In this document: in pieces, positions 1 to 22,238 of the stretch
Layout: each line of letters begins with the position of its first letter
Position numbering within the stretch: the first letter of the stretch is position 1
NCBI GenBank assembly: GCA_965644315.1
Contig: CBFFRQ010000138.1
Span: forward strand, 1-28,081
DNA: 28,081 bases
Origin: Caecitellus pseudoparvulus
Taxonomy: Eukaryota; Protista; Bigyra: Bicosoecida
Direction: 5' to 3'
Program-made: the position numbers and the translations under genes
The notes under the pieces: generated by a model
Told to the model about the DNA's origin: nothing
Seen by the model: only the letters and a program-made list of their open reading frames with translations
Database searches by the model: none

Positions 1-2320
1 AGCGCCATTTGCGATGTCGCTCGGACTCTTCGACGACCAGGCCTTGGCATTGCCGTGGGATGGCTGCGAAGTGTGGGACCACTTGGGGCCGGAGTCGATA
101 ATGCGGGGGGAAGCACGGCGTGGGGCGCATCGTGCCTCTTCCTCGGGGTGCTGCATGAGCCTGCTGCTGGGACGCATGCGCAGCATATCGTTCCGGCCGC
201 TGTTGCTCTGTAGCCCACGCGGGGCTATTGAAGGATGCATTTTGTGTCACGGTGTGCGGAACGTTGCCGCTGCAGACCGAGCGGGGTGGTGACGCCCGTC
301 ACAGCCAAGCAAGGGTGGTCGTGCCGCTTCATTTTGGTACTGGGCACAATCGGCACATTGCAGCATGAACCATTTTTGACTTGGACAGATCTCGTAGCTC
401 CAATGTTCTGCTGTGTGAGTATTTCAAAGGGCCTTCGCGCTTGGGTGCCCGGGAATCGCCTCCGCTTCTTGATGGCGCGTGAAACGCCCATCAGATGCTG
501 TCAACGCGTGCTGCTCGCGCCACAATGCTTGACTAGTGCTGTCGATGCACTGTGTTGCACATGAATTCTCATTTTTACCACTACTAGGGTCCATGTATCA
601 TGCTCTTTTCCCTGTACCACTCGCAGGCGCGAATCAGGCAACAGCGCTTTCAGAACGTGCAGTGTCGGATTCTTCAGGACGCGCTGCGTCCCACGCAGCA
701 TCCCTCATTGCCGCCTGGCATTGCCATGGGTCCCCATGGTATGAACCAATGCGCTAGCGCCTGTCTGTCTTGCGCTGCGCACTTGCCAAAGCGGGCAGGA
801 GCCGGCGCAGCGTGCCGGTGGCGTTTCGCAGTGCTCTCCGCTGCCTTCCTGGCAACGTTGGGCTGCGCCGAAGCTCACGTTGCACTTCGTGGACTCAGTA
901 TGAAGATGAATGATGTCAACTTTCATCGCCGCTTGGCGAGCACGTCTGTTGAAGACACTCAGCTATCTTCCGGCGGCTTGCATACCTGCGCCGTGACGGA
1001 CGGCAAGGTTCGATGCTGGGGTGGAGGCTATAGTGGGCAGCTCGGGTACGGGAACTTGAACCCCATCGGAGACAACGAGCTACCAGAAACTGCAGGCAGT
1101 GTGAACGTAGGCGCTGGTGTTGTCGTGGTCCAAGTTTCGGCAGGAGGCAGCCACACTTGTGTTGTGCTGGATGACGGAGGTGTCATGTGCTGGGGCTCCT
1201 CCATTGCCGGCCAGCTGGGGTACGGCAATAAGGAGAACGTTGGCGCCTCTGAGGATCCAGCTGCGGCGGGAACCGTTGATTTGGGCTCTGGTGCAGCCGC
1301 TGCCCAAGTGTCTGCAGGCAAGAGCCACACGTGCGCAGTGTTGACATCTGGGCTACTTATGTGCTGGGGGTTTGGGTCAAACGGCCGGCTTGGGTATGGT
1401 AACACCAACAACATTGGTGACAATGAGCACCCATCTGCTGCAGGCGCTGTCAACCTTGGTGCAGGACTTGCTGCAGCACAGGTTTCAGCTGGAGACAGCC
1501 ACACCTGTGCTGTGTTGACGAACGGTGGGGTCATGTGCTGGGGGACAGCATTCTCCGGCAGGCTCGGATACAGCAACTTCAACCACATTGGTGACAACGA
1601 GCACCCTGCTGCTGCAGGTCAAGTGAACTTAGGCGCGGGGCGCGCGGCAGCACAAGTTGCTGCAGGGCAGAGCCACACGTGCGTGCTTCTCACGAGCGGA
1701 GAGGTCATGTGCTGGGGTTCGGGGTCCAGTGGCCAGCTTGGGTACGGCAACACCGAGTTCATTGGCAACGATGAGCACCCAGCAACTGCTGGGACTGTCG
1801 ATCTTGGGGGCGCAACAGCATCTCAGATCACTGTCGGGAATGATCACAGCTGTGCGCTCTTGACGTCCGGTGGGGTCATGTGCTGGGGGCTGGGGTCACA
1901 TGGTATGCTTGGGTACGGCAACACCGCCAGTGTTGGAGACAATGAGCATCCAAGCTCTGTTGGTACTGTGAACATGGGCATTGGGGTTGTGGCAACTCAC
2001 CTGTCTGCAGGAGAGCGCCATACGTGTGTGCTGCACTCCCCAGCAAGTGCCATGTGCTGGGGTGAAGGCCAACATGGCAAGCTTGGCTACGGCAACACGC
2101 AGAACATCGGTGACGATGAGCACCCTGCAGATGCAGGCTTCGTTCGATTTGTCCCCTCTCCATCCCCGTCGCCCACCTCCTCACCCAGTAGCACTCCCTC
2201 CGCAACAGTCTCCCCTACTGTGTCCCCCACAAGCTCGGCCACGCCCTCTGTATCGCCGACGGCAAGCTCCTCTTCCAGCCAAACAGCCACTCCCTCAGCG
2301 ACTGCTTCAACTACACCCTC
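1..2320. repeat. Left arm of a diverged inverted duplication; its partner is ~11612-13406
   Basis: Position 1 AGCGCCATTTGCGATGTCGC matches the reverse complement starting at 13406. Translations of ORFs 14-292 (+) and 13118-13327 (-) align. The partner appears to lack roughly 290-650. Confidence 0.85.
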
Positions 2321-2333
2321 TCCATGCACCTAA
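600..2333 (+). CDS. RCC1/BLIP-II-type 7-blade beta-propeller surface protein, 3'-truncated in its Ser/Thr/Pro stalk by the telomeric tract
   Basis: Seven repeats of HxCxxxxxGxxxCWGxxxxGxLGYxN. Hydrophobic signal-like stretch WRFAVLSAAFLATLGCAEA. S/T/P-rich stalk at the C-terminus. The TAA stop (2331-2333) is part of the first telomeric unit. The true start is probably a downstream ATG (726 or 741). Confidence 0.85.
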   Translation: MLFSLYHSQARIRQQRFQNVQCRILQDALRPTQHPSLPPGIAMGPHGMNQCASACLSCAAHLPKRAGAGAACRWRFAVLSAAFLATLGCAEAHVALRGLSMKMNDVNFHRRLASTSVEDTQLSSGGLHTCAVTDGKVRCWGGGYSGQLGYGNLNPIGDNELPETAGSVNVGAGVVVVQVSAGGSHTCVVLDDGGVMCWGSSIAGQLGYGNKENVGASEDPAAAGTVDLGSGAAAAQVSAGKSHTCAVLTSGLLMCWGFGSNGRLGYGNTNNIGDNEHPSAAGAVNLGAGLAAAQVSAGDSHTCAVLTNGGVMCWGTAFSGRLGYSNFNHIGDNEHPAAAGQVNLGAGRAAAQVAAGQSHTCVLLTSGEVMCWGSGSSGQLGYGNTEFIGNDEHPATAGTVDLGGATASQITVGNDHSCALLTSGGVMCWGLGSHGMLGYGNTASVGDNEHPSSVGTVNMGIGVVATHLSAGERHTCVLHSPASAMCWGEGQHGKLGYGNTQNIGDDEHPADAGFVRFVPSPSPSPTSSPSSTPSATVSPTVSPTSSATPSVSPTASSSSSQTATPSATASTTPSPCT

Positions 2334-3402
2334 CCCTAACCCTAACCCTAACCCTAACCCTAACCCTAACCCTAACCCTAACCCTAACCCTAACCCTAAC
2401 CCTAACCCTAACCCTAACCCTAACCCCTAACCCTAACCCTAACCCTAACCCTAACCCTAACCCTAACCCTAACCCTAACCCTAACCCTAACCCTAACCCT
2501 AACCCTAACCCTAACCCTAACCCTAACCCTAACCCTAACCCTAACCCTAACCCTAACCCTAACCCTAACCCTAACCCTAACCCTAACCCTAACCCTAACC
2601 CTAACCCTAACCCTAACCCTAACCCTAACCCTAACCCTAACCCTAACCCTAACCCTAACCCTAACCCTAACCCTAACCCTAACCCTAACCCTAACCCTAA
2701 CCCTAACCCTAACCCTAACCCTAACCCTAACCCTAACCCTAACCCTAACCCTAACCCTAACCCTAACCCTAACCCTAACCCTAACCCTAACCCTAACCCT
2801 AACCCTAACCCTAACCCTAACCCTAACCCTAACCCTAACCCTAACCCTAACCCTAACCCTAACCCTAACCCTAACCCTAACCCTAACCCTAACCCTAACC
2901 CTAACCCTAACCCTAACCCTAACCCTAACCCTAACCCTAACCCTAACCCTAACCCTAACCCTAACCCTAACCCTAACCCTAACCCTAACCCTAACCCTAA
3001 CCCTAACCCTAACCCTAACCCTAACCCTAACCCTAACCCTAACCCTAACCCTAACCCTAACCCTAACCCTAACCCTAACCCTAACCCTAACCCTAACCCT
3101 AACCCTAACCCTAACCCTAACCCTAACCCTAACCCTAACCCTAACCCTAACCCTAACCCTAACCCTAACCCTAACCCTAACCCTAACCCTAACCCTAACC
3201 CTAACCCTAACCCTAACCCTAACCCTAACCCTAACCCTAACCCTAACCCTAACCCTAACCCTAACCCTAACCCTAACCCTAACCCTAACCCTAACCCTAA
3301 CCCTAACCCTAACCCTAACCCTAACCCTAACCCTAACCCTAACCCTAACCCCTAACCCCTAACCATCCCTAACCCTAACCCTAACCCTAACCCTAACCTA
3401 AC
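2329..3402 (+). repeat. Telomeric repeat tract (CCCTAA)n = (TTAGGG)n on the minus strand, ~179 units, interstitial in this assembly
   Basis: Directly visible. Variant units: CCCCTAA near 2424 and twice at ~3349-3362, CCATCCCTAA at ~3363-3372, CCTAA at ~3397-3401. Confidence 0.99.
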
Positions 3403-3448
3403 AGGCCCGGATGTTCTGAGATGCCTCGCAGAGACGCTACAGCACCTG

Positions 3449-6358
3449 GTGAAGGGAGACGGTCTCCTGCCACGGGAGCTGCACCACGGCAAGGGAGTAC
3501 TGCTCGCAAAGAAGGGTCAGACCCCCGGGGTCGCGTCGACCTACCGGCTGATCGTGTGCCGGAGCCCGCTGAGCAAGTTGGTGAACAGTGTTCTTGCATT
3601 CAGGCTGGAACAAGCCGTTCAAGGCCTCATCACTCCGCAGCAAGCAGGGTTCTCCAGAGGCCGCGGGTGCCACGAGCACGTTTTTGCGATGCTCGAAGGA
3701 CCAAGAACAGCACTGAGAACAGCGACTGCGACGTGTTCCCGGGACATTGGACCCAAGAAGAGCCCTCCACTGGCCGTTTTCGCCGTGTTTATCGACTTTC
3801 GAAAGGCTTTCGACTCCGTTGATCACAGGGCGTTGCGCGTGCTGTTAGACCACCTGCCGCTGGACCGCACCACCAGGCGACTCCTCGTGGACTTCATCGA
3901 GAACGCCAGCGTATGCATCGACACGGAACACGGCATGACCGAGGCCATTCACGCGACCAGTGGCGTAGCGCAAGGAAGCGTCCTCTCGCCCCTCCTATTC
4001 AAGATCGCGGTCGACCTGGTGTCCCGTGCGCTCTCCTTGAACCACATTCCGGGGGAGGGAACGGGGGAAAAACCGACACTGGGGATCAAGCTACTGCATT
4101 CAAAGGGGGACCCAGTCCACACTGGACCCCGATTCAGCCATGCGCTGTACGCAGACGACCTGGGACTCGTCGTAGACAGCGCGGACGCCGTGATCCGTGC
4201 GATCACCATCGTCAGGCGGGTCGGGGCGCTGCTTGGGCTCAGAGTCAACGCCTCCAAGTCGGCCATCCTGATCATGCGACCAACACCACGACTTGCGTAT
4301 CGCATGAGCCGACTCCATGTGCAGATAGTCAGCGCCAAGAAACGCCTTGCTGCGGAGTCACAGGCGCTAAAAGTCGACGGAAAGCGGATCCCTCTCGTGG
4401 ACGAATACGAGTACTTAGGAACACCGCTGCAAGCCAAGCTGTTCATACAGCATAAAGTAGCTCGTCGACATGCCGCAACCACCTTGAGCATGGCTGGGCA
4501 CTCTTCTGTGGCGATCTCTGCGGCCGAATGGCTCGCCCCGTCGGCAGCGCACCGCCTTTTGAGGACCTCAGTGGTCGCAGCAGCCGACTACACGCTGGCC
4601 ATCACCGGCAAGCACTCACTCATGCCCGACCGCATGTGCGACAATGCCGTTGGCAGTGTTCTGGACAAATCCGTGTTCGGTTTTCAGCTCCATCCGATGC
4701 GCGTCCAACACGGCGCGGTCCTTGCAGCGGCTGGTATTCCTCTGACGCACATGCGCACGATGCGAAGTCGCATTGGTTTCATAGTCCGGACACTTAAGCA
4801 GGCTGTGGTGGATTCGCCTGCTTTCAGAATCCTGATGGTGAGCGTGTGGCAGGGCCGAACGATGGTCGCGGACGTCCCGGACGAGAGGGTCCCTTCGGCC
4901 CTACTTTTGGAAGACGTAGCGGCCTCAAAGCACACCTTTTACGGTACAGGCACTCCGTGGGCGGTCAGACCCCTACTTGAGTTGCGCCTGTTGGGGTACC
5001 ACGAGGGTGTGTTCGGCGTTCTGGCCATGGCCGCGAGGTGGCACGATTTGAGCGGAAATCGGGACACCACGGCCCTACACGAAGAGATGCGATCTCTTCA
5101 AAAGGCCTTAAAGCTGCCCAAGAACACGGCCCAAAACGGCCCGAAGTTGTTCGTCGCAACAAGTGTTCCTGTGGCCTCTGCGAGGTTCGATAGGTCGGTT
5201 GACTTCCCGGCCACTTTCACGTTGAGGCAGCGTTTGGACCTCCTGGAGTCGTACTTGTTCATTGCACGAACGCAAAGAACAGACACGTATCGGGAGACCA
5301 TGTTCCTACCTGCTGAGTACCCGGGCCACTCGCCTCGGGGAGAAATAGGCGACAAAAGAGTGAATCCGACGCTCTCGCCGAGGCCTCACCATTTGGACGT
5401 CCGAGCGCGAACACACGCGGAACTGCATCCGATTCCGAGTGTTCCCTGTAGTGCTTGGACTGCCCGTCATCCTGACAGAAGTTGGTTGCCGAAGGTGTTC
5501 ATGCTGCAGACACAGCAGCTCCTGCATCCGGGTGCACTCCTGACACCGTATATCGCATGTCCCCTCTGTCTGGACCCCGAAATACGCGATGCGGAGTTCA
5601 TTTTAGACCACATTCTGCTGGACTGCCCTTCAGTGTCTCCAGAACGTCTGGCGTTCTTCCGAGAGGCAGCGCAGAACATGCAGGACTGTGACGAAGCGGC
5701 GAAGTCAACCGCTGTGCCGAGGCGGCCGATGGCCGAGGCCCTTCGGCACCCACCTCTGAGATACGTCACCATTCCAGAAAGCCTGCACACAGCGGTGCAG
5801 GCTGGCTGTCAACTGGACACTGGAACACGTATCTCATGCCAGAACACCCGGGCGTTGCTGAAGCGGCTCGCCCTGTGTGGTCAGTGGCCCACGGGAGCAC
5901 CCGAGTGTGCGGACTGGGATCACGCAACTTGTGCTGCCCTCACGGCGCCACACATGGAACGGTTGCGTGTTCCAGTCCGAAACTCGACCCATCTACTGGA
6001 CCAAGCCCCAGTGAAAGCCGCTGAAGCATTGGAGGCATTTGCTGGGCCCTTGCGGCAAAAGTTACTCCCGAATTCTGGGGGTGCCGCAGACGGCAAAAGT
6101 TTCTACTGGCCCCACGAGGTGGTCGCCGCACCTCCCGGATGGGTGCAAGTCCTGAAAACGTGCATCCGGTACTGTGGGGCCGTGTTTGATCACGTGGTAG
6201 AAGCTCAACTTCGGGGCGCAGGTGTGGAACGCGGGCAGCCCGCCGCGGACCTCGCGCGGCGAGCCCGCTACACGGCCGCCACGCCTGCTGCCTGGACCAT
6301 GCCAAGCCACCTCGCTCCCGGGCGAGATGGCGCAGCAGAGGAGCAAGAAAGTGAGTGA
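3449..6358 (+). CDS. Non-LTR-type reverse transcriptase RT-A (N-terminally truncated) with C-terminal CCHC zinc knuckle
   Basis: Motifs YRLI, QAGF, FIDFRKAFDSVDH, GVAQGSVLSPLLF, LYADDL, LRVNASKS, YEYLG, then CPLC..HILLDCP. The frame is open upstream to 3401 (TGPDVLRCLAETLQHL), so the GTG at 3449 is not a real start. Confidence 0.95.
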   Translation: MKGDGLLPRELHHGKGVLLAKKGQTPGVASTYRLIVCRSPLSKLVNSVLAFRLEQAVQGLITPQQAGFSRGRGCHEHVFAMLEGPRTALRTATATCSRDIGPKKSPPLAVFAVFIDFRKAFDSVDHRALRVLLDHLPLDRTTRRLLVDFIENASVCIDTEHGMTEAIHATSGVAQGSVLSPLLFKIAVDLVSRALSLNHIPGEGTGEKPTLGIKLLHSKGDPVHTGPRFSHALYADDLGLVVDSADAVIRAITIVRRVGALLGLRVNASKSAILIMRPTPRLAYRMSRLHVQIVSAKKRLAAESQALKVDGKRIPLVDEYEYLGTPLQAKLFIQHKVARRHAATTLSMAGHSSVAISAAEWLAPSAAHRLLRTSVVAAADYTLAITGKHSLMPDRMCDNAVGSVLDKSVFGFQLHPMRVQHGAVLAAAGIPLTHMRTMRSRIGFIVRTLKQAVVDSPAFRILMVSVWQGRTMVADVPDERVPSALLLEDVAASKHTFYGTGTPWAVRPLLELRLLGYHEGVFGVLAMAARWHDLSGNRDTTALHEEMRSLQKALKLPKNTAQNGPKLFVATSVPVASARFDRSVDFPATFTLRQRLDLLESYLFIARTQRTDTYRETMFLPAEYPGHSPRGEIGDKRVNPTLSPRPHHLDVRARTHAELHPIPSVPCSAWTARHPDRSWLPKVFMLQTQQLLHPGALLTPYIACPLCLDPEIRDAEFILDHILLDCPSVSPERLAFFREAAQNMQDCDEAAKSTAVPRRPMAEALRHPPLRYVTIPESLHTAVQAGCQLDTGTRISCQNTRALLKRLALCGQWPTGAPECADWDHATCAALTAPHMERLRVPVRNSTHLLDQAPVKAAEALEAFAGPLRQKLLPNSGGAADGKSFYWPHEVVAAPPGWVQVLKTCIRYCGAVFDHVVEAQLRGAGVERGQPAADLARRARYTAATPAAWTMPSHLAPGRDGAAEEQESE

Positions 6359-6732
6359 TAAAAGCTTGCTTTGGGTTGATAGTGCATTCTAAGATGTTAT
6401 TCCGAAATTCCCAGTGTCGTAACGCGCGGCGGGGCCGTTTTGGGTCGCGGGGTGGCGCGGTGTGCGCGGGGTCGCCGCGGCGCCCCCAACACACCAAGGC
6501 CGAAACCCGCACCCAACTCGCCCAACAGGCGCCGAACGCCTGAACAACGACGACTAACATTGAACTACCATGTTCTGAAAAGAACAAGCTTACTTCACAT
6601 GGTGACTCACCATGCTTTGTGCAAGATATGTGTACGGAGCAAGCGAGCGCTGTGGCCCGCTTCTTTCGAGGAGCAAGTGTGAGGTGAGTGTGGTGAAAAA
6701 AAACAAGAGGCGACAATGCATTGAACTTCCTA
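6359..6732 (+). ncRNA. Putative structured 3' UTR RNA of element A
   Basis: Nested stems 6440-6451/6506-6516 and 6459-6464/6490-6495. Hairpins at 6526-6542, 6571-6586 (GAAA loop), 6598-6614 and 6659-6674 (UUCG loop). The second copy carries structure-preserving substitutions. Confidence 0.6.
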
Positions 6733-9700
6733 CGTTGTGCGGATGAACGAAAGCACATGCTCATGGAGGACCTTGCTGCCACCCATGTTGAAAGGAAGAA
6801 GGCGATGCGCAAGTGTACTCGGCTGGTTGCCAAGAAGCACAAGGCTGCCATGTTCCAAGTCCAGCAGCGCATCCGGGACCTTGCCCGGCTTGACCCCTTC
6901 ACTGCTCACCTGCATGTGCGGAAGCTGTCCGGCAGAAGGAGGAAGGGCACTTCGTCGTCCATCCAGTCAGTCATGGACGACAGCGGCACCCTCATCACAG
7001 ACCCATCACAAGTGCGGGCTGTGGTCAGGGACCAGATGGCCCAGATCATCAGCCCCCCTCCACGGCAAGTCGTGTCCCTGAAGTTCGGACTGGGCCGGCT
7101 GCTCCCATCGGCCCCGACCCACATGTCGACTGAAGCCGCCTGGACCCCGAGCGTGGACCATATCCTGAAGAAGATCCAGTCCCTGAGCCTCCACCGCAAC
7201 CCTGGCACAGGGCACTACCAGGCTGAGCATGTCAAGTATGCCAGCGAGGACTTCCGGAAGAGGTACGCTGCCGCTCTTCAACAGGCCATCAGCACCGGTT
7301 CATGTCCAAGTCAGTACCACAGTGGGGTGGGGACACTCATCCCCAAGACCGCCAGCCAGGCCGGGAGGGTGCAGACATACAGGCTCATTGTCTGCCGTCC
7401 CCCCCAAGCCAAGCTCTTCTTCTCGGTCGTGGCCTCATGTGTCGAAGACTGGGTGCAGCACTGGATCTCACATGAGCAGGCAGGCTTCACCCATGCCCGC
7501 AACACCCACGAGCAGATCCTGGCCTTGCAGGAGGTGTCCACTGCCCACCTGCGCGCCAAGCCCACTGCCAGTGTCCTTGTCCTTTTCGTGGACTTCAAGA
7601 GTGCCTTTGACACTGTTAGCCACGAAGCGATACTCGAGATCCTCGAGTCAGCAAGCCTCCCACAGCCCCTGCTCAGCTGCGTGAAGGACTACATGCAGCG
7701 CGCCACAGTGGCCATTCACACTGGCCATGGTCTTTGCGACCCCCTCCCAGTCACCAACGGGGTCCCCCAGGGTGGCGCACTGTCGCCTCTGTTGTTCAAG
7801 GTGGCTATTGATGTGCTCTCTCAACGCCTGAGAGAGCTGCCAAGTCAGGGAGTGTCAGGGGCAGGAGTGCCGACACCCCGCGGCCACGTCACGCATACGC
7901 TCTATGCGGACGATCTTGCTTGCCTCGCCACCACCCCTGCTGCCCTCCATCGGATGTTCCTTGAAGTCAAGGCCCTGGGCAGCCGGGTGGGCTTGGCCAT
8001 CAACCCGCGCAAGTCCGGGGTCATGGTCCTCACCGGGGCGCAACAGGTCAATGGGGTGTCAGCCACGGAGCGGCGGAAGCTCATCTGGCGGTCCCGCTGG
8101 CTGAGGTCAGGGCAGTCCATGAAGGTCAAGGGGACACCCATCCAACGCACGAGCACCTACTCGTACTTGGGTGTCCCCCTGTCTGAAACTGTCAGCCGAA
8201 CCCGACTGCTTGCCACGAGGCAGGCCACTCTGTCCTGCACTCGGGCTGGGTTCGGCTGCGGTGCCCTCCTCAGTAGTGCGTGGCTGAGTCCGATCCTGAA
8301 GCAGCGGATCGGCACTGCATCCATCAACAGTGCCGCCGACTACATCTTGGCGTCCCAGGTCAGCAACTCGGTGCTACCTTTGCGGGACGTCGATCGTGGA
8401 CTTGCCATCGCCTTCAGCAAGGCCCAGCTGGGGATGCAAAGCTCGCTAGCACGTATGCACAACTATGCAAAGCTTGCTGTGTGCGGCGTCTTGCCAACAC
8501 ACATCCGGGCGACGAAACTCCGCAGCAACATCTTCATGAAGCTGCTGAAGAATGTCCAAGTGCCCACCCCCATGGCCAAGGCGCTGTCCATCAGCCTGCG
8601 CCAAGCCCTGGACCTGCTGCCCTCCCCCCTGGACATGGCCAGCATCTTCCTGGCCAATGTCCGCCTCGACAGGCCAGGCGCTGGAGGCATCCCAGATCCA
8701 TGGGCCTTACACGGTCTACTCGACCTCTGGCTCCTTGGATGCCTCCCTGACCGCGCACGCCTGGAGGCTGTGTGCCTGGAGCCGCCGCCTGACTCTGCCC
8801 CAGACACACACGGGGTCGACATCACCGCTGGGATGGACCCCGCCCCCCCCAAGATCCAGCTGCTTGGACTCGCGGCAGCGGAGTCCTCAGATCTGTCGGC
8901 TGCCCCCCAGTTCCCGGACACCACCCCCTGGGCCACTCGGCAACGCGTCGTCGCCTCCTTCCTTCATGTGGCCCAGACGGTCAAGTGCGGTGCAGTTGGC
9001 TACACTCCCACGGGGGAGATGAAGGCCACCAGGCGTCCGAAGGAGTACCACATCGGTGTGGGTGCTCGCTTCTTCGCCTGGCTGCACCCGATCCCTTCCT
9101 CTGTGAACCCAGTCTTCTGGGTCCACGAAGGCGATCAGGAGAGACGTGTGAAGGTGCACCTGTGGCAGACGCTTCAAGTGTTCAACGGGGATGACACCCC
9201 GACACTGTTCAGCGCCTGCCCCCTGTGCCACAGCGTCTCCTGGTGCAGCCTGCAGGAGCACGTCCTTCTTGACTGCCCCCACCACGCCCTGGTCCCTGCG
9301 AGAAGGTCCGCCCTGTCAGAGGTGCGGAACCTCCTGTCCAGATCCAATGATGCAGTGAGGGGGGTCGCCAACTGCCAGTACCTCGAAGTACCCCCCCCAC
9401 TGCTGGATGCTGTTGTCCACGCCGACGAAGGCCGCTTGTTGGGCCGCCCGTGTCGCCTGCTGCTGCTGCGACTGCTGCTGTGCGGCCAGTGGCCCCATCG
9501 GTGGGGCCAGCCTCCGGCACAACAGCCCTGGAGTCCCGAGGCAGCCGCGGTCCTGAGTAACCCTCATGTCACTCTCCGCGGCTCCTCGGGTCCACTCCGC
9601 CCACCCAAGTACTGGCGCGAGGCCCTGGTAGCTGCCACGGGCCTCGCGGTATCTGCGTGGGACGCGGTGGTGACGTGCATGCTCAGCCTTACCTCTCGTG

Positions 9701-10020
9701 CCGACCGTCACATCCAGAGGCACGCCCGGTACCTCTGGTGGGCGGCGCATGGACGAACGTGTCCTCTCCCAGGTTACTCGGCTCCTGATCCGAGTACTGT
9801 GAGGAAGCATGTGCGGGACGTGAAGACGCGGCGCTTCGAGCGCACTTACTTCCCTGTCAAGTCCCCTCGTCGGCCGCCTCGCTCCTTCACGAGGCAGGCC
9901 ACCTTGCTCGACTTCGGGCTGGCACGGCCGGAAGTCCACGAGGAACCTCCGGCACCGTCGATTTCATCCGCGGCGTCGTCCTCTGGGTCGTCCTTGAAGT
10001 GTCCATCTGACTCTGAGTAG
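6721..10020 (+). CDS. Non-LTR-type reverse transcriptase RT-B with C-terminal CCHC knuckle (first four codons belong to element A; first ATG at 6757)
   Basis: Motifs YRLI, EQAGF, FVDFKSAFDTVSH, GVPQGGALSPLLF, LYADDL, LAINPRKS, YSYLG, then CPLC..HVLLDCP. The N-terminal IQSVMDDSGTLITDP resembles the post-endonuclease linker of APE-type LINE ORF2. Confidence 0.95.
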   Translation: MNFLRCADERKHMLMEDLAATHVERKKAMRKCTRLVAKKHKAAMFQVQQRIRDLARLDPFTAHLHVRKLSGRRRKGTSSSIQSVMDDSGTLITDPSQVRAVVRDQMAQIISPPPRQVVSLKFGLGRLLPSAPTHMSTEAAWTPSVDHILKKIQSLSLHRNPGTGHYQAEHVKYASEDFRKRYAAALQQAISTGSCPSQYHSGVGTLIPKTASQAGRVQTYRLIVCRPPQAKLFFSVVASCVEDWVQHWISHEQAGFTHARNTHEQILALQEVSTAHLRAKPTASVLVLFVDFKSAFDTVSHEAILEILESASLPQPLLSCVKDYMQRATVAIHTGHGLCDPLPVTNGVPQGGALSPLLFKVAIDVLSQRLRELPSQGVSGAGVPTPRGHVTHTLYADDLACLATTPAALHRMFLEVKALGSRVGLAINPRKSGVMVLTGAQQVNGVSATERRKLIWRSRWLRSGQSMKVKGTPIQRTSTYSYLGVPLSETVSRTRLLATRQATLSCTRAGFGCGALLSSAWLSPILKQRIGTASINSAADYILASQVSNSVLPLRDVDRGLAIAFSKAQLGMQSSLARMHNYAKLAVCGVLPTHIRATKLRSNIFMKLLKNVQVPTPMAKALSISLRQALDLLPSPLDMASIFLANVRLDRPGAGGIPDPWALHGLLDLWLLGCLPDRARLEAVCLEPPPDSAPDTHGVDITAGMDPAPPKIQLLGLAAAESSDLSAAPQFPDTTPWATRQRVVASFLHVAQTVKCGAVGYTPTGEMKATRRPKEYHIGVGARFFAWLHPIPSSVNPVFWVHEGDQERRVKVHLWQTLQVFNGDDTPTLFSACPLCHSVSWCSLQEHVLLDCPHHALVPARRSALSEVRNLLSRSNDAVRGVANCQYLEVPPPLLDAVVHADEGRLLGRPCRLLLLRLLLCGQWPHRWGQPPAQQPWSPEAAAVLSNPHVTLRGSSGPLRPPKYWREALVAATGLAVSAWDAVVTCMLSLTSRADRHIQRHARYLWWAAHGRTCPLPGYSAPDPSTVRKHVRDVKTRRFERTYFPVKSPRRPPRSFTRQATLLDFGLARPEVHEEPPAPSISSAASSSGSSLKCPSDSE

Positions 10021-10859
10021 CGGGCGATGTGTGTAGAGCGCGGCGCGAGGCGGTGCAAGCTTACGGCGTGGCGTGGTGACAACCACGGTCGTGGCTGAGC
10101 GAAGTGCGAGAGCAGGGTGATGTGATGTCCTTGATGAATGACGGAACCTGCGGAAAGTTGGAAGATGATGAAGTGAATATGTCCAGTATACTTACATGAT
10201 GGCTCGGGGTCCACGTGCAGCCCGAGATAGATTCCTGTGACGGGGCGCGCGGAATTTGGCAGGGTGAACACGCGGGCGCGCGGGGCAACGTCGCAGGCGG
10301 GGCGCACAGGTCCTCAGGGCCTTGAGTGATGAGTCAGCTGGATTATCTGTGAAGAAAAGGAGGTGTTCTTGGTGTTCTTGGTGCGCGGGTGGCGTTGTTC
10401 CGGCGGTGCGCGCTGCTACCACCGGCGTGGTGCAGTGCAACACCGTCGTGAAACGCCACCCGAAGGCGGCCACTGCGGCTCAGGACAGCGCGCAGTGGCC
10501 CCAGGCACACGTGCAGTGCCTGGCAAGGGCCAGGAGAAGCGGGGGTTTCTGAATTATGAAGCGAAGTGTGGACTGGAACGAAGCAAGAGTGGGCCCGGCC
10601 CCCTCTGGCTCAGCCGACTGAGCCGAGAGGGCGCGGGCGGGGCAGTTCGACACGTATGGGCGGGCGCGGGCGCGCCCTAGCAAGCGGCAGCTCATACAAC
10701 GGACGTATGTCCGTGATGGCTGCAGACCCACGAGAGTGGGAGCCGCTGTAGCGCTCCTGGTGTGCCTTGTGCACAGCAGCGAACGCTACATGTGATGCCC
10801 AAGCTGTATCGCGTGCAAGCGTGAAGGCGACATGCAATGCATTGAATGAACTAACCCTA
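6733..10859 (+). mobile_element. Non-LTR retroelement B, 5'-truncated, joined directly to the 3' end of element A
   Basis: The RT frame runs from the A/B junction. An ~840 nt 3' UTR ends in CAATGCATTGAATGAACTAACCCTA (10835-10859). Confidence 0.8.
10021..10859 (+). ncRNA. Putative structured 3' UTR RNA of element B
   Basis: Hairpins at 10072-10087 (GACA loop), 10468-10500 (10 bp), 10501-10523 (8 bp) and 10601-10631 (13 bp plus a bulge). A multi-stem domain at 10683-10747 includes CCCAC-GAGA-GTGGG. Confidence 0.5.
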
Positions 10860-10973
10860 GGGGTGCACGGGGGGGACAGAAAATCTCTTGACTGGCCGCA
10901 TGTGACGCCCAAGCCGAACCGCGCAAGTTGCAAGCGTGGAGGTGAAGTGCAATGCATTGAACAGCTAACCCAA
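10789..10973 (+). repeat. Diverged direct repeat of the ~70 nt element terminus (10789-10859 and 10899-10973); the second unit is probably the 3' fragment of a third element
   Basis: CATGTGAyGCCCAAGC...TGCAAGCGTGrAGGyGA..TGCAATGCATTGAA..CTAACCC is present twice. Confidence 0.8.
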
Positions 10974-11140
10974 CAGAGTAAATCAATCTCAGTCCCAAAC
11001 TTCGACTCATGATCAGCGAGTCGAAATTCGTCACCACAATTGATTCACTCTGTATATGGCGGTTGAGTCCCGAGATACATTCGCTCCAACCCTTTACGAG
11101 CCTTTGAGCGCGGTCCATCCTGCATCAGCTTGTGGGGCTG

Positions 11141-13090
11141 TCATGAATGTGTCCGGGCAGGGTCACTTTCTGCACTTCCTGTTGTCGTATAGCGTGGCAT
11201 TCGCCTGCGTTGAAGCATTACGAATGCAGCAACAGCAGCAACCAAACCCATAATCAATACAATGCCAGCTACCATCCAAGACTGCCCCCCTGCACTCGGC
11301 CCACTGCTAGAGGCCTGTCCCTGTATGGCTGAAGGATTGAAGGCCTGGGGTGACTGTGAGGCAGCTGCAGTTGAGGAGGGCGATGAGGTCACACTGCTTA
11401 TCGTGGACACTGTGGCGGTTGCACTGCTAGACGCCGTCGAGCTGGGTGTCGGTGTCACAGACAAGGACGGGGTGCCTGTCGGAGAGCTGGACATTGTGGC
11501 TGCTGTAGTCGATGTCACCGAGCTTGTTGCAGTTGGGCTGTAAGTTGCCGTCGCCGAGCTTGACGCAGTGAGACTGTGGCTGGGCGTCAGAGGGCGACAG
11601 CGAAAGGGGCGGTGTAATCGAAGCAGTCGCTGAGGGGGTGCCTGTATGACTGGAAGAGGAACTTGCTGTCGTCGACGCAGATGGGGTGGCCGAGCTTGTG
11701 GGGGACACAGTAGGGGAGACTGTTGCGGAGGGAGTGCTACTTGGCGAGGCAATGGGCGACGGGGATGGAGAGGGGACAAATCGAATGAAGCCTGCAGCTG
11801 CAGGGTGCTCGTCGTCACCGATGTTCTGCGCGTTTCCGAAGCCAAGCTTGCCATGCTGGCCTTCACCCCAGCACATGGCACTTGCTGGAGAGTCCAGCAC
11901 ACACGTATGGCGCTCTCCTGCAGACAGGTGAGTTGCCACAACCCCAGTGCCCATGTTCACAGTACCAACAGGGCTTGGATGGTCGTTGTCTCCAACATTG
12001 GCGGTGTTGCCGTACCCAAGCAACCCATGAGACCCCGAACCCCAGCACATGACCTCTCCGCTCGTGAGAAGCACGCACGTGTGGCTCTGTCCTGCAGCAA
12101 CTCATGCTGCCGCGCGCCCCGCGCCCAAGTTCACTTGACCTGCAGCAGCAGGGTGCTCGTTGTCACCAATGTGGTTGAAGTTGCTGAATCCGAGCCGACC
12201 AGAGTATGCTGTCCCCCAGGCACATGACCCCACCGGACGTTAACACAGCACAGGTGTGGCTGTCTCCAGCGGAAACCTGTGCTGCAGCAAGACCTGCACC
12301 CAGGTAGACAGCGCCTGCAGCAGATGGGTGCTCATTGTCACCAATGCTGTTGGTGTTACCATACCCAAGCCGGCCATCTGATCCGAACCCCCGGCACATA
12401 AGCAGCCCAGTTGTCAACACTGCGCACGTGTGGCTCTTGCCTGCAGGCACTTGGGCAGCGGCTGCACCAGAGCCCAAATCAACGGTTCCCGCCGCAGCTG
12501 GATCCTCATTGTCGCCAACGCTCTCCTTATTGCCGTATCCCAATTGGCCGGCAATGGAGGAGCCCCAGCACATGATACCTCCGTCATCCAGCACAACACA
12601 AGTGTGGCTGCCTCCTGCCAAAACTTGTGCCACAGCAACACAAGCCCCAAGGTTCACACTGCCTGTGATCTCTGGAATCTTGTTGTCCCCGATGGAGTTC
12701 AAGCTCCCGTACCCGAGCTGTGCGCCGAAACCGCCTCCCCAGCATCGAACCTAGCCATCGGTCACTGCGCTGGTATGAAATCCACCTGAAGATAGCGTAG
12801 TGTCTTCAACAGAGGTGCTCGAAATGCGATAAGGAATGCTGACATCATTCAGCTACAGACTGAGTCCGCACAGTGCAACGTTGGCTTCGATACAGCTTGG
12901 TGCTGCAGGGAAGGTTGCGGAGAGCACCGCAACACGTCTCCGGCACCATGCACCGCTGTCCATCCGCCTTGACCAGAAGAAAGTGTGGAAGCAACGGAAG
13001 CTCGTGACTTGGTTCACAGCATGGGAACCTATTGAAGCTTCTGGCGACGATGAGGGACGCTGCGCGAGCCGCAGCTCGACCTTCCACATT
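11141..13090 (-). pseudogene. RCC1-repeat type I membrane protein pseudogene, an inverted paralog of 600-2333 that retains the stalk, TM helix and tail
   Basis: Fragments in ORFs 12163-12702, 11427-12074 and 11141-11941. Lesions: AAG>TAG at ~12752, a +C frameshift at ~12220, CAA>TGA at ~12103 and a frameshift at ~11590. Six repeats. TM helix WMVAGIVLIMGLVAAVAAFVML followed by QRRR. Confidence 0.85.
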
Positions 13091-13643
13091 CGTCAGCTCT
13101 AGGAATCACCGCACCGTTCAGATTACTGAGGCAACCTTCCGCACACCGTGACACAATACGGAGCCTTCAACATACCCACATGAGCTACGTGGCAGCAGCG
13201 GCTGGGGCGATATGCTGCGCGTGCGTCCCAGCAGCAGGCTGATGTAGCACCTCAAGGAAGAGACACGATGCGCCCCACGCCGTGCTTCCTCCTCCATCAT
13301 CATCCCGGGGCCAAAGTGTCCTTCCATTTGGACAACACTTCATAGCTGCCTCTAAAGCTGTCAAGGCCCGGACATCGAAGGGCCCAGCGACATCGCAAAA
13401 GGCGCTGAAGCTGCCGTGCACCCCGATCCAGTTGATGGTTGGCAGGTTGGAATCCCCTCAAGTTCAGACCTCAAAACGTGCCACAGGAGCCTCTGTCAGT
13501 CTCGCGAGTTCTGCAGCTTACTGTTTTCAACTGTTGATCACGTTCACCTGCATCATCCGGCCAACGCCTACAAATACTCTTCACAATGCCTCAGCCGCCC
13601 AGAACTGAACTCTGCAGCCAGGACCGACGACCACATGTAAACA

Positions 13644-15143
13644 TCACCGCCCACAAGCTGCCCTGAGGAGTAGAAAATGGCGCCTCCCACTTCTCGTGCT
13701 TGTTCCGCACCAAGCAGCGTCTTTCACTGCCTGCAGGGCAGTGTCCCCCGCCAACGCTGCAGCTTCCAGCGGGATGGCCCGGCTGCCTGTGAGCCCCATC
13801 AACTCTCGCACCACGTGCGAGTGGCCATTCCTGCACGCCATGCGGAAGCCCACGTCAGGGCCGTCCCAGCTTCCCACATGGACATCCACAGCTCTTTGTC
13901 CAGTGAGGGCCAACAACTCGCGCACCACGTGCACGTGGCCACGCTCGCAAGCACTCCGAAAACCAACCTCTGGCCCAGTCCCATCTGCAACGTGAACATC
14001 AATCGCCCTGTCGCCAACCACGCCAAGTAACTCGCGCAGCACGGCCAAGTGGCCAAGATAGCAAGCCCATCGGAAGCCATACTCGGGCCCAACTCGGTCT
14101 CCCGCGTGGATATCCACCGCATGCTCCGCTGGCAACGCCAACAGCAAACGCACAACGTTTGCGTGGCCATACCGGCAAGCGAGCCGAAAGGCAGACTCAG
14201 GCCCATCAGCATCCCTTGCATGTACATCCACGGCCAGCTCGCCAGAAAGGGCGAGCAAGTCTCGCACGACAGCCTCATGTCCTCCTGCACATGCAGATCG
14301 AAAGCCAGCTTCAGCCCCATCCTCGTCACATGCGTGCACGTCTACCTGCAGATCACCACTGAGAGCCAGCAGCTCTCGAACTACAGCGTCATGGCCGTGC
14401 TGACATGCCCTCCGAAAGCCAGCCTCTGGTCCTTCCCAATCTCCAGCGTGCACGTCCACAACGCGGTGGCCTGTCAGCGCCAGGAGTTCGCGCACCACAC
14501 CAACGTGGCCCCGTGCACACGCGTACCGAAAGGGGGCCTCAGGCCCATCTTCATCTCCCACGTGCACATCAACCTCACGGTCCCCATCAAGCCGCAGCAA
14601 CACACGCACAACATCCAAGTGGCCGTGCAAGCACGCGGCTCGGAAGGCAGCCTCAGGCCCAGCCGAGTCCCCAGCGCGCACGTCCACTGCACGGTCGCTG
14701 CCGAGACGCAGCAGCTCAGAAACAACATCCAGGTGGCCTTCCGAACTGGCCGCTCGAAAGGCAAACTCAGGCCCGTCTTCATCCCCGGCGTGCACATCCA
14801 CCGCTCTTTCCCCGCTCAGCGCAAGCAGCTCCCGCACCGTCTCCACATGCCCATTCCAGCAAGCCAATCGAAAACCCGCCTCAGGGCCAATCTCATCACC
14901 TGCATGGACATCCAGGCCTGCCTCTTCCTCCACGGCCAGCAGCGCTCGCAACAGGCCAACGTGCCCTGCTCCACATGCTCTCAAAAAGCCAGCGGTAATG
15001 TCGTCCCCTGTCAGAGCCCCAAGCACAGACTCTGCACTCGCCTTTGACCCGTGGAGCATGTCCGTCAGTGTGATTACGTCACCACCTGTGCAAGCAGCCC
15101 TCCACTCTCCCACGGCACCGGCATCGTCCGCCTCACTCGCCAT
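13644..15143 (-). CDS. Ankyrin-like repeat protein, about 11 repeats of 38 aa
   Basis: Repeat FRxACxxGHxxVVRELLxLxGxRxVDVHAGDxxGPExx. ATG at 15143 (MASEADD) lies within ORF 13644-15206. Confidence 0.85.
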   Translation of the reverse strand: MASEADDAGAVGEWRAACTGGDVITLTDMLHGSKASAESVLGALTGDDITAGFLRACGAGHVGLLRALLAVEEEAGLDVHAGDEIGPEAGFRLACWNGHVETVRELLALSGERAVDVHAGDEDGPEFAFRAASSEGHLDVVSELLRLGSDRAVDVRAGDSAGPEAAFRAACLHGHLDVVRVLLRLDGDREVDVHVGDEDGPEAPFRYACARGHVGVVRELLALTGHRVVDVHAGDWEGPEAGFRRACQHGHDAVVRELLALSGDLQVDVHACDEDGAEAGFRSACAGGHEAVVRDLLALSGELAVDVHARDADGPESAFRLACRYGHANVVRLLLALPAEHAVDIHAGDRVGPEYGFRWACYLGHLAVLRELLGVVGDRAIDVHVADGTGPEVGFRSACERGHVHVVRELLALTGQRAVDVHVGSWDGPDVGFRMACRNGHSHVVRELMGLTGSRAIPLEAAALAGDTALQAVKDAAWCGTSTRSGRRHFLLLRAACGR

Positions 15144-21459: not shown

Positions 21460-22238
21460 ATGCACATGAAGCAGGGTGTGCGTTTGAAACACGCACACAC
21501 GTTGTCCCAGGGCCCACTGGAAGCCGTTGAGGCACTGGAGGCTTTTGCCGGGCCTATGCGGCAAGGTTGCTCCCGAATTCTGGGGGTGCCGCTGACGGCA
21601 AAAGTTTCTCCTGGCCCCACGAGGTGGTCGCCGCACCTCCCGGATGGACGAAAGTCCTGAAAACATGCATCCGGTACTGTGGGGCCGTGTTAAATCACGT
21701 GGTAGAAGCTCAACTTCAGGGCGCAGGCGTGGAACGCGGGCAGATCGCCGCGGACCTCGCGCGGCGAGCCCGCTACACGGCCGCCACGCCTGCCGCATGG
21801 ACCATGCCGCGCCACCTCACTCCCGGGCGAGGTGGCGCAGCAGAGGAGCAAGAAAGTGAGTGATAAAAGCTTGCTTTGGGTTGATAGTGCATTCTAAGAT
21901 GTTATTCTGAAATTCCCAGTGTCGTAACGCGCAGCGGGGCCGTTTTGGGCTGCGGGGTGGCGAGGTGTGCGCGGGTCGCCGCGGCGCCCCCAACACGCCA
22001 AGGCCGAAACCCGCGCCCAACTCACCCAACAGGCGCCGAACGCCTGAATGACGACGAAGAACATTAAATGACCATGTTCTGAAAAGAACATGCTCATCTC
22101 ACACGGTGACTCACCATGTTTCGTGCAAGATATGTGCGCGACGCAAGCGAGAATTGTGGCCCGCTTCTTTCGAGGAGCAAGTGTGAGGTGAGTGTGGTGA
22201 AAACAAGAGGCTACAATGCATTGAACTTCCTAACCCAA
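21460..22238 (+). mobile_element. Internal relic of the 3' end of element A (RT C-terminus plus complete 3' UTR)
   Basis: ORF 21567-21863 (LPNSGGAADGKSF..AAEEQESE) is nearly identical to the RT-A C-terminus. The UTR aligns with 6359-6732. There is a 1-bp deletion near 21565. It ends CAATGCATTGAACTTCCTAACCCAA. Confidence 0.9.

What the first reader, a model, noticed from the sequence alone, without database searches (positions are those of the whole stretch)
2329..10973. Telomere-capped head-to-tail array of LINE-type RT elements: candidate telomere-primed end-elongation system
Seen: (CCCTAA)n, then 5'-truncated element A, 5'-truncated element B and a short third 3' end. All are co-oriented away from the tract, with no poly(A) tails and no evident target-site duplications, and each ends at a CTA(ACCC) motif. 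Known: this polarity and stacking matches retroelements that prime on the chromosome 3' end (Drosophila HeT-A/TART; endonuclease-deficient Penelope-like Athena, Coprina and Terminon elements). Here, however, the RTs carry non-LTR motifs (DFxxAFD, GVxQG, YADD, CCHC), not Penelope-like or TERT motifs. Inference: these LINE-derived families anneal their RNA to the TTAGGG overhang, extend the end, truncate, and are then re-capped by telomeric repeats or by another element. I do not know of a description of this combination.
Basis: partly seen in the sequence, partly recalled or inferred. Interest (0 to 1): 0.92.

Follow-up and report, generated by a model that had tools for sequence, protein, structure and literature searches.

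The report
Telomere-only LINE stack in a protist
This stretch is a real head-to-tail pile of broken copies of jumping genes (LINEs) that, in this marine protist, sit almost only at chromosome ends, all point the same way and end in one telomere unit instead of a poly(A) tail. It is a protist counterpart of the telomere transposons of flies and silkworm, in a cell that still has telomerase.

Summary
A (CCCTAA)179 tract (2329-3402) is followed by 5'-truncated element A (3403-6732), 5'-truncated element B (6733-10859) and a 112-nt 3' fragment of a third family (10860-10971). All are sense-oriented away from the tract, without poly(A) tails or target-site duplications.

Genome-wide, 25 of 25 RT-bearing copies on 19 contig ends with a checked terminal repeat tract point 5' outward. 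All families share one 3' end: a palindromic box, a 3-5 nt spacer, then CTAAC running in register into 0 to about 300 nt of telomere repeat (median 9.5 nt at 34 junctions). TERT is present.

Two corrections:
- Full-length copies encode a conserved, apparently intact APE endonuclease, so endonuclease-free priming is not shown.
- The tract is not a contig-end cap. An inverted paralogue of a subtelomeric RCC1 gene abuts it, and I could not support that joint with read data.

Telomere-specific LINEs are already known (TRAS/SART, HeT-A/TART, Zepp, Tx1-1_ACar). This is a new variant: a stramenopile, a single giant ORF, and a 3' end like the telomerase template. The short junction tracts favour attachment to short or eroded ends over insertion into long tracts.

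This scan has already reported the same system on other contigs of this genome.

The parts
1..2328 (+). Inverted paralogue of the subtelomeric RCC1-repeat gene block (ORF 600-2333). It is joined by its truncated 3' end to the distal end of the telomere tract, and the joint is unverified.
   Evidence: Pfam RCC1 / RCC1_2 / WD40_RLD. It is 94-95% identical to copies that lie on the opposite strand just inside the arrays on C163, C107, C28 and C114. C163 is 100% identical over 2174-2325 and then continues as gene, whereas the window drops one C and switches to repeats. No Logan contig of runs X1 or X3 covers 2326-2345.
2329..3402 (+). (CCCTAA)179 telomere tract, C-strand orientation, as at a left chromosome end. 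Variant units lie at its proximal (right) end.
   Evidence: The same 30-mer occurs 12,447 times forward and 3,856 times reverse in the genome, and at contig termini.
3403..6732 (+). Element A, 5'-truncated: RT plus C-terminal CCHC region (ORF to 6355) and 3' UTR. Its 3' box is at 6713-6724 and it ends in CTA, fused directly to B.
   Evidence: RVT_1 E 1.8e-24. There are 13 other copies at 94-99% identity, some with much longer open frames. Junction sequence; the junction is unique in the genome.
6733..10859 (+). Element B, 5'-truncated between the endonuclease and RT: RT plus CCHC (to 10017) and an 835-nt 3' UTR. It ends CTAACCCTA.
   Evidence: RVT_1 E 9.4e-32. Copies at 98-100% identity on at least 10 contig ends. 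The full-length relative on C105 has APE plus RT in one 2313-aa open frame. The junction is unique.
10860..10971 (+). Third element: only the last ~112 nt (3' box plus ACAG-CTAACCC) of a family about 60% identical to B.
   Evidence: Its final ~50 nt are identical to the 3' ends of L022 and L026; 79% identical to B's 3' end.
10972..13400 (-). Start of the subtelomere proper, with a second RCC1-family gene on the minus strand. The same boundary is shared with C163, C107, C28 and C114.
   Evidence: Homology to four other chromosome ends begins at the first base searched, 10974; the shared run AACAGAG... itself begins at 10972. In those ends an AT-rich block lies distal to this point.
21507..22236 (+). 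Fossil 3' fragment of an A-family element (730 nt, 91% identical), ending CTTC-CTAACCC, with no repeat tract upstream. It is part of a block duplicated among subtelomeres.
   Evidence: Copies at equivalent positions occur on C28, C114, C187, C116, C2, C107, C163, C109 and C136.

Best explanation
The region is the distal part of a chromosome end built by a telomere-dedicated superfamily of APE-type non-LTR retrotransposons. These are single giant ORFs carrying an N-terminal region, an APE endonuclease, an RT and a CCHC motif. Several families are present, sharing 32-76% amino-acid identity.

Inferred: their RNA ends in a conserved box (TGCAATGCATTGA), a 3-5 nt spacer and CUAAC(CC), which is the complement of the telomeric G strand and reads like a telomerase template. 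That end pairs with a G-strand 3' end at or very near the chromosome terminus, and the RT copies the RNA onto it. This would explain what is shown: every copy lies sense-strand 5' outward.

Also inferred: the new end then erodes, or reverse transcription stops early, giving 5' truncation. It is then re-capped either by telomerase or by another element.

In this window the inferred order is:
1. The third fragment was added to a nearly naked subtelomere end.
2. B was added.
3. A was added directly to B's eroded end.
4. At least 1 kb of telomerase repeats followed.

The elements appear to act mainly on short or uncapped ends. What the conserved endonuclease does (nicking the last repeats, or trimming the end) is inferred only.
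For: Location and polarity:
- All RT copies on contigs over 200 kb lie within about 21 kb of an end.
- 25 of 25 copies on 19 contig ends with a verified terminal repeat tract have the 5' end outward (binomial 3e-8).

Shared 3' end: all nine distinct 3'-end types keep the box and CTAAC, although A and B share only 32% amino-acid identity.

Junctions: at 34 distinct 3' junctions the telomeric run after CTA has a median of 9.5 nt. 31 of 34 are 40 nt or less and 13 of 34 are 6 nt or less, whereas the tracts measured are 258 to 1074 nt. If insertion were uniform along a tract of at least 258 nt, this would have a probability of about 1e-20. In the window the runs are 0, 6 and 4-5 nt.

Further points:
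- Stacks of tiny 3' fragments, as expected from repeated addition and erosion (window third fragment; C163 9100-9400).
- Recent activity: nine 3' UTR copies at 100% identity with different flanks.
- Both window junctions are unique in the genome.
- A TERT gene is present (PF12009, E 7e-21, 1389-aa frame).
- A full-length copy on C5 starts right after the terminal tract, and the stack it heads ends in register on a 415-nt tract.
Against: - The APE domain is complete. The catalytic E, Y, D-N, D-H and SDH residues are invariant in 8 copies from at least 4 families, and the model has an APE1/ExoIII fold. Selection therefore keeps a nuclease that simple end-priming would not need.
- Some junctions sit on long tracts (54, 63, 304 and 415 nt), which also fits insertion inside tracts.
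- Internal tracts might shorten after insertion.
- End-to-end template jumping between RNAs could also give repeat-poor junctions.
- No RNA or biochemical data were available. The junction sample comes from the flanks of RT-bearing copies only.
Confidence: 0.55

Rival explanations
1. TRAS/SART-type mechanism. The APE endonuclease nicks the G strand inside double-stranded telomere repeats at a fixed position. Ordinary target-primed reverse transcription then inserts the element within the tract, and the arrays build up by repeated insertion. The end itself is maintained by telomerase alone.
For: - Conserved, apparently active APE domain.
- The 3' end always continues in register into the repeats.
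- Some elements sit between two sizeable tracts (C5; L015, 304 nt).
- Known precedent in Bombyx; SART1 can also use (TTAGGG)n (PMC7265360).
Against: - 26 of 34 junctions have 18 nt (three units) or less of repeat downstream, and 13 have 6 nt or less. In the window, A is fused to B with no repeat at all, and the third fragment meets the subtelomere with about 2 nt beyond CTAAC.
- SART1 needs at least three units (PMC7265360).
- The phase of the tract end at 5' junctions varies.
Confidence: 0.3
2. The stack is not made by transposition at this end. It was copied from other chromosome ends by subtelomeric recombination or break-induced replication, or it is an assembly artefact of repeated sequence.
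For: - Subtelomeres here are heavily duplicated.
- The fossil A fragment at 21507-22236 was clearly spread by duplication.
- The contig is short, and its left joint lacks read support.
Against: - The A-to-B and B-to-third junctions and both truncation points are unique in the genome.
- The same architecture, with different junctions, recurs on dozens of contig ends.
Confidence: 0.05
3. This concerns the left joint only (2328/2329). It could be a real fusion of a telomere to a break in another subtelomere, leaving an interstitial 1-kb telomere tract. Or it could be a chimeric join made during assembly.
For: For a real fusion:
- The left arm is a distinct copy; its best other match is 95%, so it is not represented elsewhere in the assembly.
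- The tract's distal end is perfect, as in a former true terminus.

For an artefact:
- A 1-nt deletion lies 3 nt from the joint.
- No contig of the source runs crosses 2326-2345. The only exact contig there continues as the intact gene.
- The arrangement would be dicentric.
Against: Logan contigs show presence, not absence.
Confidence: 0.5

Closest known systems
TRAS and SART families of Bombyx mori and other insects (R1 clade, telomeric-repeat-specific LINEs)
   Same: APE-type LINEs confined to telomeric repeats, in fixed orientation and with many 5'-truncated copies, coexisting with telomerase repeats.
   Different: TRAS/SART have two ORFs and a poly(A) tail and insert inside (TTAGG)n; SART1 needs at least three units (PMC7265360). 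Here there is one giant ORF, no poly(A), a 3' end that is itself a telomere unit, and mostly very short downstream tracts. No sequence similarity to the TRAS1 or R1Bm endonuclease was detectable by phmmer against solved structures.
HeT-A / TART / TAHRE of Drosophila (Jockey clade)
   Same: Head-to-tail, 5'-truncated arrays at the extreme ends with the 3' end toward the centromere. Elements attach directly to eroded ends and to each other. TART and TAHRE also keep an APE domain. These points rest on my own knowledge of the families plus PMC10088271.
   Different: Drosophila has no telomerase and no short repeats, and its elements end in oligo(A). Here TERT and TTAGGG tracts are present and the elements end in CTAAC(CC).
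Endonuclease-deficient Penelope-like elements (Athena, Coprina; Gladyshev and Arkhipova 2007, cited in PMC10088271)
   Same: The 3' end carries a short stretch complementary to the G-strand overhang. Copies are interleaved with telomere repeats, in organisms that have telomerase.
   Different: Those are Penelope-like RTs without any endonuclease. Here the RT is LINE-type (closest to L1 ORF2p, then R2) and an APE endonuclease is conserved.
Tx1-1_ACar (anole) and Zepp (Chlorella), L1-like LINEs at telomeres
   Same: APE-type LINEs associated with telomeric repeats in telomerase-positive organisms (PMC10088271). One outside RT hit, at an E-value of about 1e-22, is a Chlorella vulgaris protein that its source names LINE-1 ORF2.
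   Different: No specific affinity: outside hits from arthropods and algae all score alike, about 1e-20 to 1e-25. Zepp has poly(A) and nests into its own copies (my own knowledge). Clade placement was not tested here.
MoTeR (Pyricularia) and GilM/GilT (Giardia), CRE-clade telomeric elements
   Same: Telomere-restricted non-LTR elements interleaved with telomerase repeats.
   Different: Those belong to the CRE clade (PMC10088271), whose restriction-enzyme-like endonuclease I state from my own knowledge, and MoTeR carries telomere-like repeats at its 5' end. Here the endonuclease is APE-type and the telomere unit is at the 3' end.

Membership tests
Non-LTR (LINE) retrotransposon, APE-bearing | RT of non-LTR type | tested here: met
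   RVT_1 hits. Best solved relatives are L1 ORF2p at 1e-21 and R2 at 5e-17; no TERT chain appears among the matches up to E = 1.
Non-LTR (LINE) retrotransposon, APE-bearing | APE-like endonuclease N-terminal to the RT, with catalytic residues | tested here: met
   Exo_endo_phos over the full profile. Invariant E, Y, D-N, D-H and SDH. AF2 model at pLDDT 75; Foldseek APE1/ExoIII E about 1e-11. This applies to full-length relatives; the two copies in the window have lost it by truncation.
Non-LTR (LINE) retrotransposon, APE-bearing | Poly(A) or A-rich 3' tail | tested here: not met
   All 3' ends finish in box-spacer-CTAAC followed by telomere units.
TRAS/SART (R1 clade) | Integration at a fixed position inside telomeric repeat arrays, with repeats on both sides | tested here: inconclusive
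   The 3' side is always in register, but the median is only 9.5 nt of repeat. Some copies lie between long tracts.
TRAS/SART (R1 clade) | Two ORFs (gag-like ORF1 plus ORF2) and a poly(A) tail | tested here: not met
   Single open frame of 2313 aa (C105) or at least 3394 aa (C147); no poly(A).
TRAS/SART (R1 clade) | RT groups within the R1 clade | not tested
   No labelled clade references were available. Exhaustive HMMER shows no close named relative.
HeT-A/TART/TAHRE-type terminal transposons | Head-to-tail arrays at chromosome ends with the 5' end outward | tested here: met
   25 of 25 copies on 19 verified ends.
HeT-A/TART/TAHRE-type terminal transposons | Replace telomerase: no TERT and no short repeats | tested here: not met
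   TERT RNA-binding domain hit at E 7e-21; abundant CCCTAA tracts.
Endonuclease-deficient Penelope-like elements (Athena/Coprina/Terminon) | Penelope-like RT and no endonuclease | tested here: not met
   LINE-type RT; APE domain present.
Endonuclease-deficient Penelope-like elements (Athena/Coprina/Terminon) | 3' end complementary to the G-strand overhang | tested here: met
   CTAAC(CC) at every 3' end. This is a functional resemblance only.

The most novel reading that the evidence does not exclude
A LINE lineage has evolved a built-in 3' end that reads like a telomerase template, and it uses this end to prime directly on short or broken chromosome ends. It would then serve as a second, retrotransposon-based end-healing system working alongside telomerase in a free-living protist. 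That would be a living intermediate between ordinary target-primed LINE integration and telomerase-like end extension, with the conserved APE nuclease repurposed to prepare the end.
Probability: 0.35. Interest if true: 0.8.

Novelty: new variant of a known kind. Interest (0 to 1): 0.6.

Why it matters
Telomere-dedicated retrotransposons are known from a handful of lineages: flies, silkworm and other insects, Giardia, Chlorella, rice-blast fungus, rotifers and one lizard. They are central to arguments about how telomerase and retroelements are related.

This adds an independent case in a stramenopile, built from APE-type LINEs that end in a telomere unit rather than poly(A), and it coexists with telomerase.

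The very short repeat runs at most junctions suggest the elements act on short or uncapped ends. That makes the question 'do LINEs heal chromosome ends in a telomerase-positive cell?' directly testable in a small (30.6 Mb), apparently culturable organism.

The family has almost no relatives among 1.84 billion representative proteins. The few there are come from marine samples, one of them again beside a telomere tract.

Tried and rejected
- **Reads.** I laid Logan contigs of four runs on window 1-2345 only, deliberately stopping 17 nt into the tract so that no long TTAGGG-type repeat went to the reads tool. The result gave no support for the RCC1/telomere joint, but it cannot exclude it. Only assembled contigs were on offer, no raw long reads, so single-read support for the array junctions could not be tested.
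- **RT phylogeny against named clades.** Not done, because no labelled reference sequences were reachable. The word-based homologue search gave only weak hits of 28% identity or less. The names of ten outside hits were uninformative, and so was the ESM Atlas.
- **Endonuclease against solved structures by sequence.** Only one marginal hit, a plant APE at E 0.69, and none to the TRAS1, R1Bm or L1 endonucleases. The fold search was needed instead.
- **Conserved RNA structure at the 3' end.** RNAalifold found only 3 compensatory pairs and a covariation term of -0.84. I do not claim a structure, only the primary-sequence box.
- **'Truncation at residue 111' shared by several B copies.** This turned out to be a 1-nt change in a C run inside longer copies, possibly a homopolymer error, not a common truncation point.
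- **An ATGCATTGA match in the foreign contig L074.** It is not followed by CTAAC and is probably chance.
- **The left arm as a retro-copied RCC1 mRNA.** Rejected, because it includes upstream intergenic sequence homologous to the other subtelomeres.
Full report
**What is in the window.**

The window is the whole contig C138 (28,081 bases) of a 30.6-Mb, 215-contig genome. Earlier notes of this scan describe the organism as a marine heterotrophic stramenopile; I did not test its identity. A 6-nt repeat, (CCCTAA)179 with 98% matches, spans 2329-3402. To its right, all on the + strand, lie three pieces:
- Element A (3403-6732). Its ORF to 6355 hits RVT_1 (E 1.8e-24), followed by a 3' UTR.
- Element B (6733-10859). 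Its ORF to 10017 hits RVT_1 (E 9.4e-32), followed by an 835-nt 3' UTR.
- A 112-nt piece (10860-10971), which is the extreme 3' end of a third family.

There is no poly(A) and no flanking duplication. The three 3' ends read box-ACTTC-CTA, box-ATGAA-CTAACCCTA and box-ACAG-CTAACCC.

**What the elements are.**

The RT is of non-LTR type. The closest solved proteins are human L1 ORF2p (1e-21) and R2 (5e-17); the only other RT chains listed, retron and group II intron RTs, are marginal (E about 0.01), and no TERT chain is listed.

A full-length relative of B on contig C105 has one open frame of 2313 aa. An Exo_endo_phos (APE) domain matches over the full Pfam profile about 350 aa upstream of the RT. 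The A family has an open frame of at least 3394 aa with the same domain.

I aligned eight endonuclease domains from at least four families. The catalytic E, Y, D-x-N, D-H and S-D-H residues are invariant. An AlphaFold model (pLDDT 75, pTM 0.81) matches APE1 and ExoIII with Foldseek E about 1e-11. The two copies in the window have lost the endonuclease by 5' truncation, but the lineage is not endonuclease-deficient.

Full-length copies start at a fixed 5' end (TTTCCAAATGTCAA..., sometimes preceded by AAC), directly after telomere units.

**Genome-wide distribution.**

Protein searches of the genome found 42 scored matches to B and its relatives (families at 98, 76, 60 and about 50% identity). 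They also found 13 other A-family matches on 12 contigs.
- On every contig longer than 200 kb, the copies lie within about 21 kb of an end.
- Copies near a contig start are on the + strand, and those contigs begin with CCCTAA repeats. Copies near a contig end are on the - strand, and those contigs end in TTAGGG repeats.
- Counting only ends where I verified the terminal repeats, 25 of 25 copies on 19 ends point 5' outward (3e-8).

A few old fragments (77-88% identity) do lie inside large contigs, for example at C30:253,727 and on C89. Nine copies of B's 3' UTR are 100% identical yet have different flanks, so the family is or was recently active. TERT is present: PF12009 matches at E 7e-21, above the Pfam cut-off, in a 1389-aa frame on C77.

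**The shared 3' end and the junctions.**

All nine distinct 3'-end types keep TGCAATGCATTGA (its core CAATGCATTG is a perfect palindrome), then 3-5 variable nt, then CTAAC. This holds even for A versus B, which share only 32% amino-acid identity. CTAAC then continues in register into telomere units.

At 34 distinct junctions the telomeric run after CTA has a median of 9.5 nt. It is 40 nt or less in 31 junctions, 18 nt or less in 26, and 6 nt or less in 13; the longest is 304 nt. The tracts I measured run from 258 to 1074 nt. If elements inserted at random positions in tracts of at least 258 nt, the chance of this distribution is about 1e-20.

Where the downstream sequence is not telomeric, the element stops anywhere from CTA to CTAACCCTA. 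This suggests the RNA itself carries about one and a half units.

In the window:
- A is fused to B's truncated body with no repeat at all.
- B meets the third fragment after 6 nt.
- The third fragment meets the subtelomere after about 2 nt beyond CTAAC.

Both element-to-element junctions are unique in the genome. Stacks of tiny 3' fragments occur elsewhere too (C163 9100-9400). Conversely, on C5 a full-length 5' end follows the terminal tract directly. About 10.3 kb further in, an element 3' end runs in register into a 415-nt tract, so additions onto long tracts also occur.

**Mechanism.**

Shown:
- location, polarity and truncation of the copies;
- the telomere-complementary 3' end;
- the scarcity of repeats at most junctions;
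- the presence of TERT and of a conserved APE domain.

Inferred: the RNA's CUAAC(CC) end pairs with a G-strand 3' end at or next to the terminus, and the RT copies the RNA onto it. The new end is then shortened, and either telomerase or another element caps it.

The junction statistics favour action on short or eroded ends over TRAS/SART-style insertion inside long tracts; SART1 needs at least three units and a poly(A) tail (PMC7265360). But conservation of the nuclease argues that a cleavage step matters, perhaps nicking the last repeats or trimming the end. Template jumping between RNAs could also produce repeat-free junctions. I therefore put the end-attachment reading at about 0.55 and the insertion-within-tracts reading at about 0.3.

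**The left side of the tract.**

Bases 1-2328 carry an RCC1-repeat gene on the + strand, and its 3' part runs straight into the distal, perfectly regular end of the tract.

The gene belongs to a subtelomeric family that normally lies on the opposite strand just inside the arrays (C163, C107, C28, C114 at 94-95% identity). A more distant paralogue sits in that normal position in this same window, at about 11,141-13,400. So the contig reads as two chromosome ends joined head to head.

The C163 copy is 100% identical over 2174-2325 and then continues as gene. The window drops one C and switches to repeats 3 nt later. In Logan contigs of the two runs of the source organism, the only contig covering 2213-2325 continues with the intact-gene sequence. 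The depth in the last bin is fully explained by that contig, so nothing covers 2326-2345.

Whichever it is, the tract's polarity and its degenerate proximal units show that it was the cap of the right-hand arm.

**Other context.**

- The subtelomere boundary near 10972 is shared with four other ends (the search began at 10974). In those ends an AT-rich block of more than 900 bp lies distal to it. Here the third fragment sits there instead.
- A 730-nt A-family 3' fragment at 21507-22236, ending CTAACCC with no repeats upstream, recurs at equivalent positions in at least eight other subtelomeres. It is a fossil end that was internalised and then spread by duplication.

**Relatives and literature.**

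- An exhaustive HMMER search of 1.84 billion representatives found only 12 proteins at 1e-30 or better.
- Two of these are full-length. One is a 2150-aa protein on a coral-metagenome contig (30% identical to B). The other is a 3724-aa protein on a Logan contig that begins with three CCCTAA units in the expected polarity (32% identical to A).
- Beyond these, hits are generic LINE RTs at about 1e-20 from arthropods and algae.
- About half of the sampled 31-mers of window 5100-11099 occur in several marine metagenomes from different studies.
- A 2023 survey lists the known telomeric retrotransposons as SART/TRAS, GilM/GilT, Zepp, MoTeR, Tx1-1_ACar, Athena and HeT-A/TART/TAHRE, none from stramenopiles (PMC10088271). 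Four full-text searches found no description of this system. The library is incomplete, so this is not proof.

**Verdict.**

This is a genuine telomere-specific LINE array. However, the elements encode an endonuclease, the tract is not terminal in this contig, and LINEs at telomeres are a known kind.

I class it as a new variant of a known kind, on four grounds: a stramenopile host, a single giant ORF, a telomere-unit 3' end, and a bias toward short ends.

The same system was already reported by this scan on other contigs of this genome, including an RT-less partner element that I did not examine here.

Noticed in passing
window 1-2328 and joint at 2328/2329: An inverted paralogue of the subtelomeric RCC1 gene is joined to the distal end of the 1-kb telomere tract, with a 1-nt deletion 3 nt from the joint. 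It is either a head-to-head end fusion or an assembly chimera.
   Followed up: partly
window 21507-22236: Fossil 3' fragment of an A-family element, ending CTAACCC with no repeats upstream. It is shared at equivalent positions by at least 8 other subtelomeres: an old chromosome end that was internalised and then duplicated.
   Followed up: partly
L075 (C163:9397-10316); C107:1-238; C28:1-238; L022: An AT-rich block of more than 900 bp, very unlike the 59% GC genome and containing a long palindrome, lies between the element arrays and the shared boundary AACAGAGTAAATC on four other ends. It is absent from this window. Its nature is unknown.
   Followed up: no
L005-L008, L016, L028 (about locus position 1500); window 7051-7056: Several otherwise 95-100% identical B copies, and one copy of the 76% family, lose the reading frame near the same place. 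In the B copy examined (L005) the cause is a C run of 5 instead of 6. This is either a homopolymer assembly error or a mutational hot spot, so 'open frame' lengths understate how intact the copies are.
   Followed up: partly
L002 about 4220-4250 (C99): After a B 3' end the sequence reads CTAACCTAA and then AGGGTTAGGG. That is a short telomere motif in the opposite orientation, possibly the trace of a head-to-head event.
   Followed up: no
L074 (Logan contig) and L073 (coral metagenome contig): Divergent full-length relatives (3724 aa and 2150 aa, about 30% identity) occur in other marine samples. L074 begins with three CCCTAA units, and its element points away from them.
   Followed up: partly
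window 14538-14804 and 25808-26336: Tandem 114-nt (38-aa) repeats lie inside ankyrin-repeat genes. With the RCC1 genes, these form multi-copy subtelomeric gene families, with dozens of paralogues at 65-94% identity.
   Followed up: no
window 5100-11099 in public runs: About 40-50% of the sampled 31-mers of the elements occur in marine metagenomes from several studies and in runs labelled as other organisms. This protist, or close kin, therefore seems widespread and may contaminate cultures.
   Followed up: no
all 3' ends, e.g. window 6713-6725, 10834-10846, 10949-10961: The conserved 3' box has a perfect 10-nt palindrome (CAATGCATTG) at its core. It could be an RT recognition site, an RNA dimerisation site or, as in HeT-A, a promoter for the next element downstream.
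   Followed up: partly
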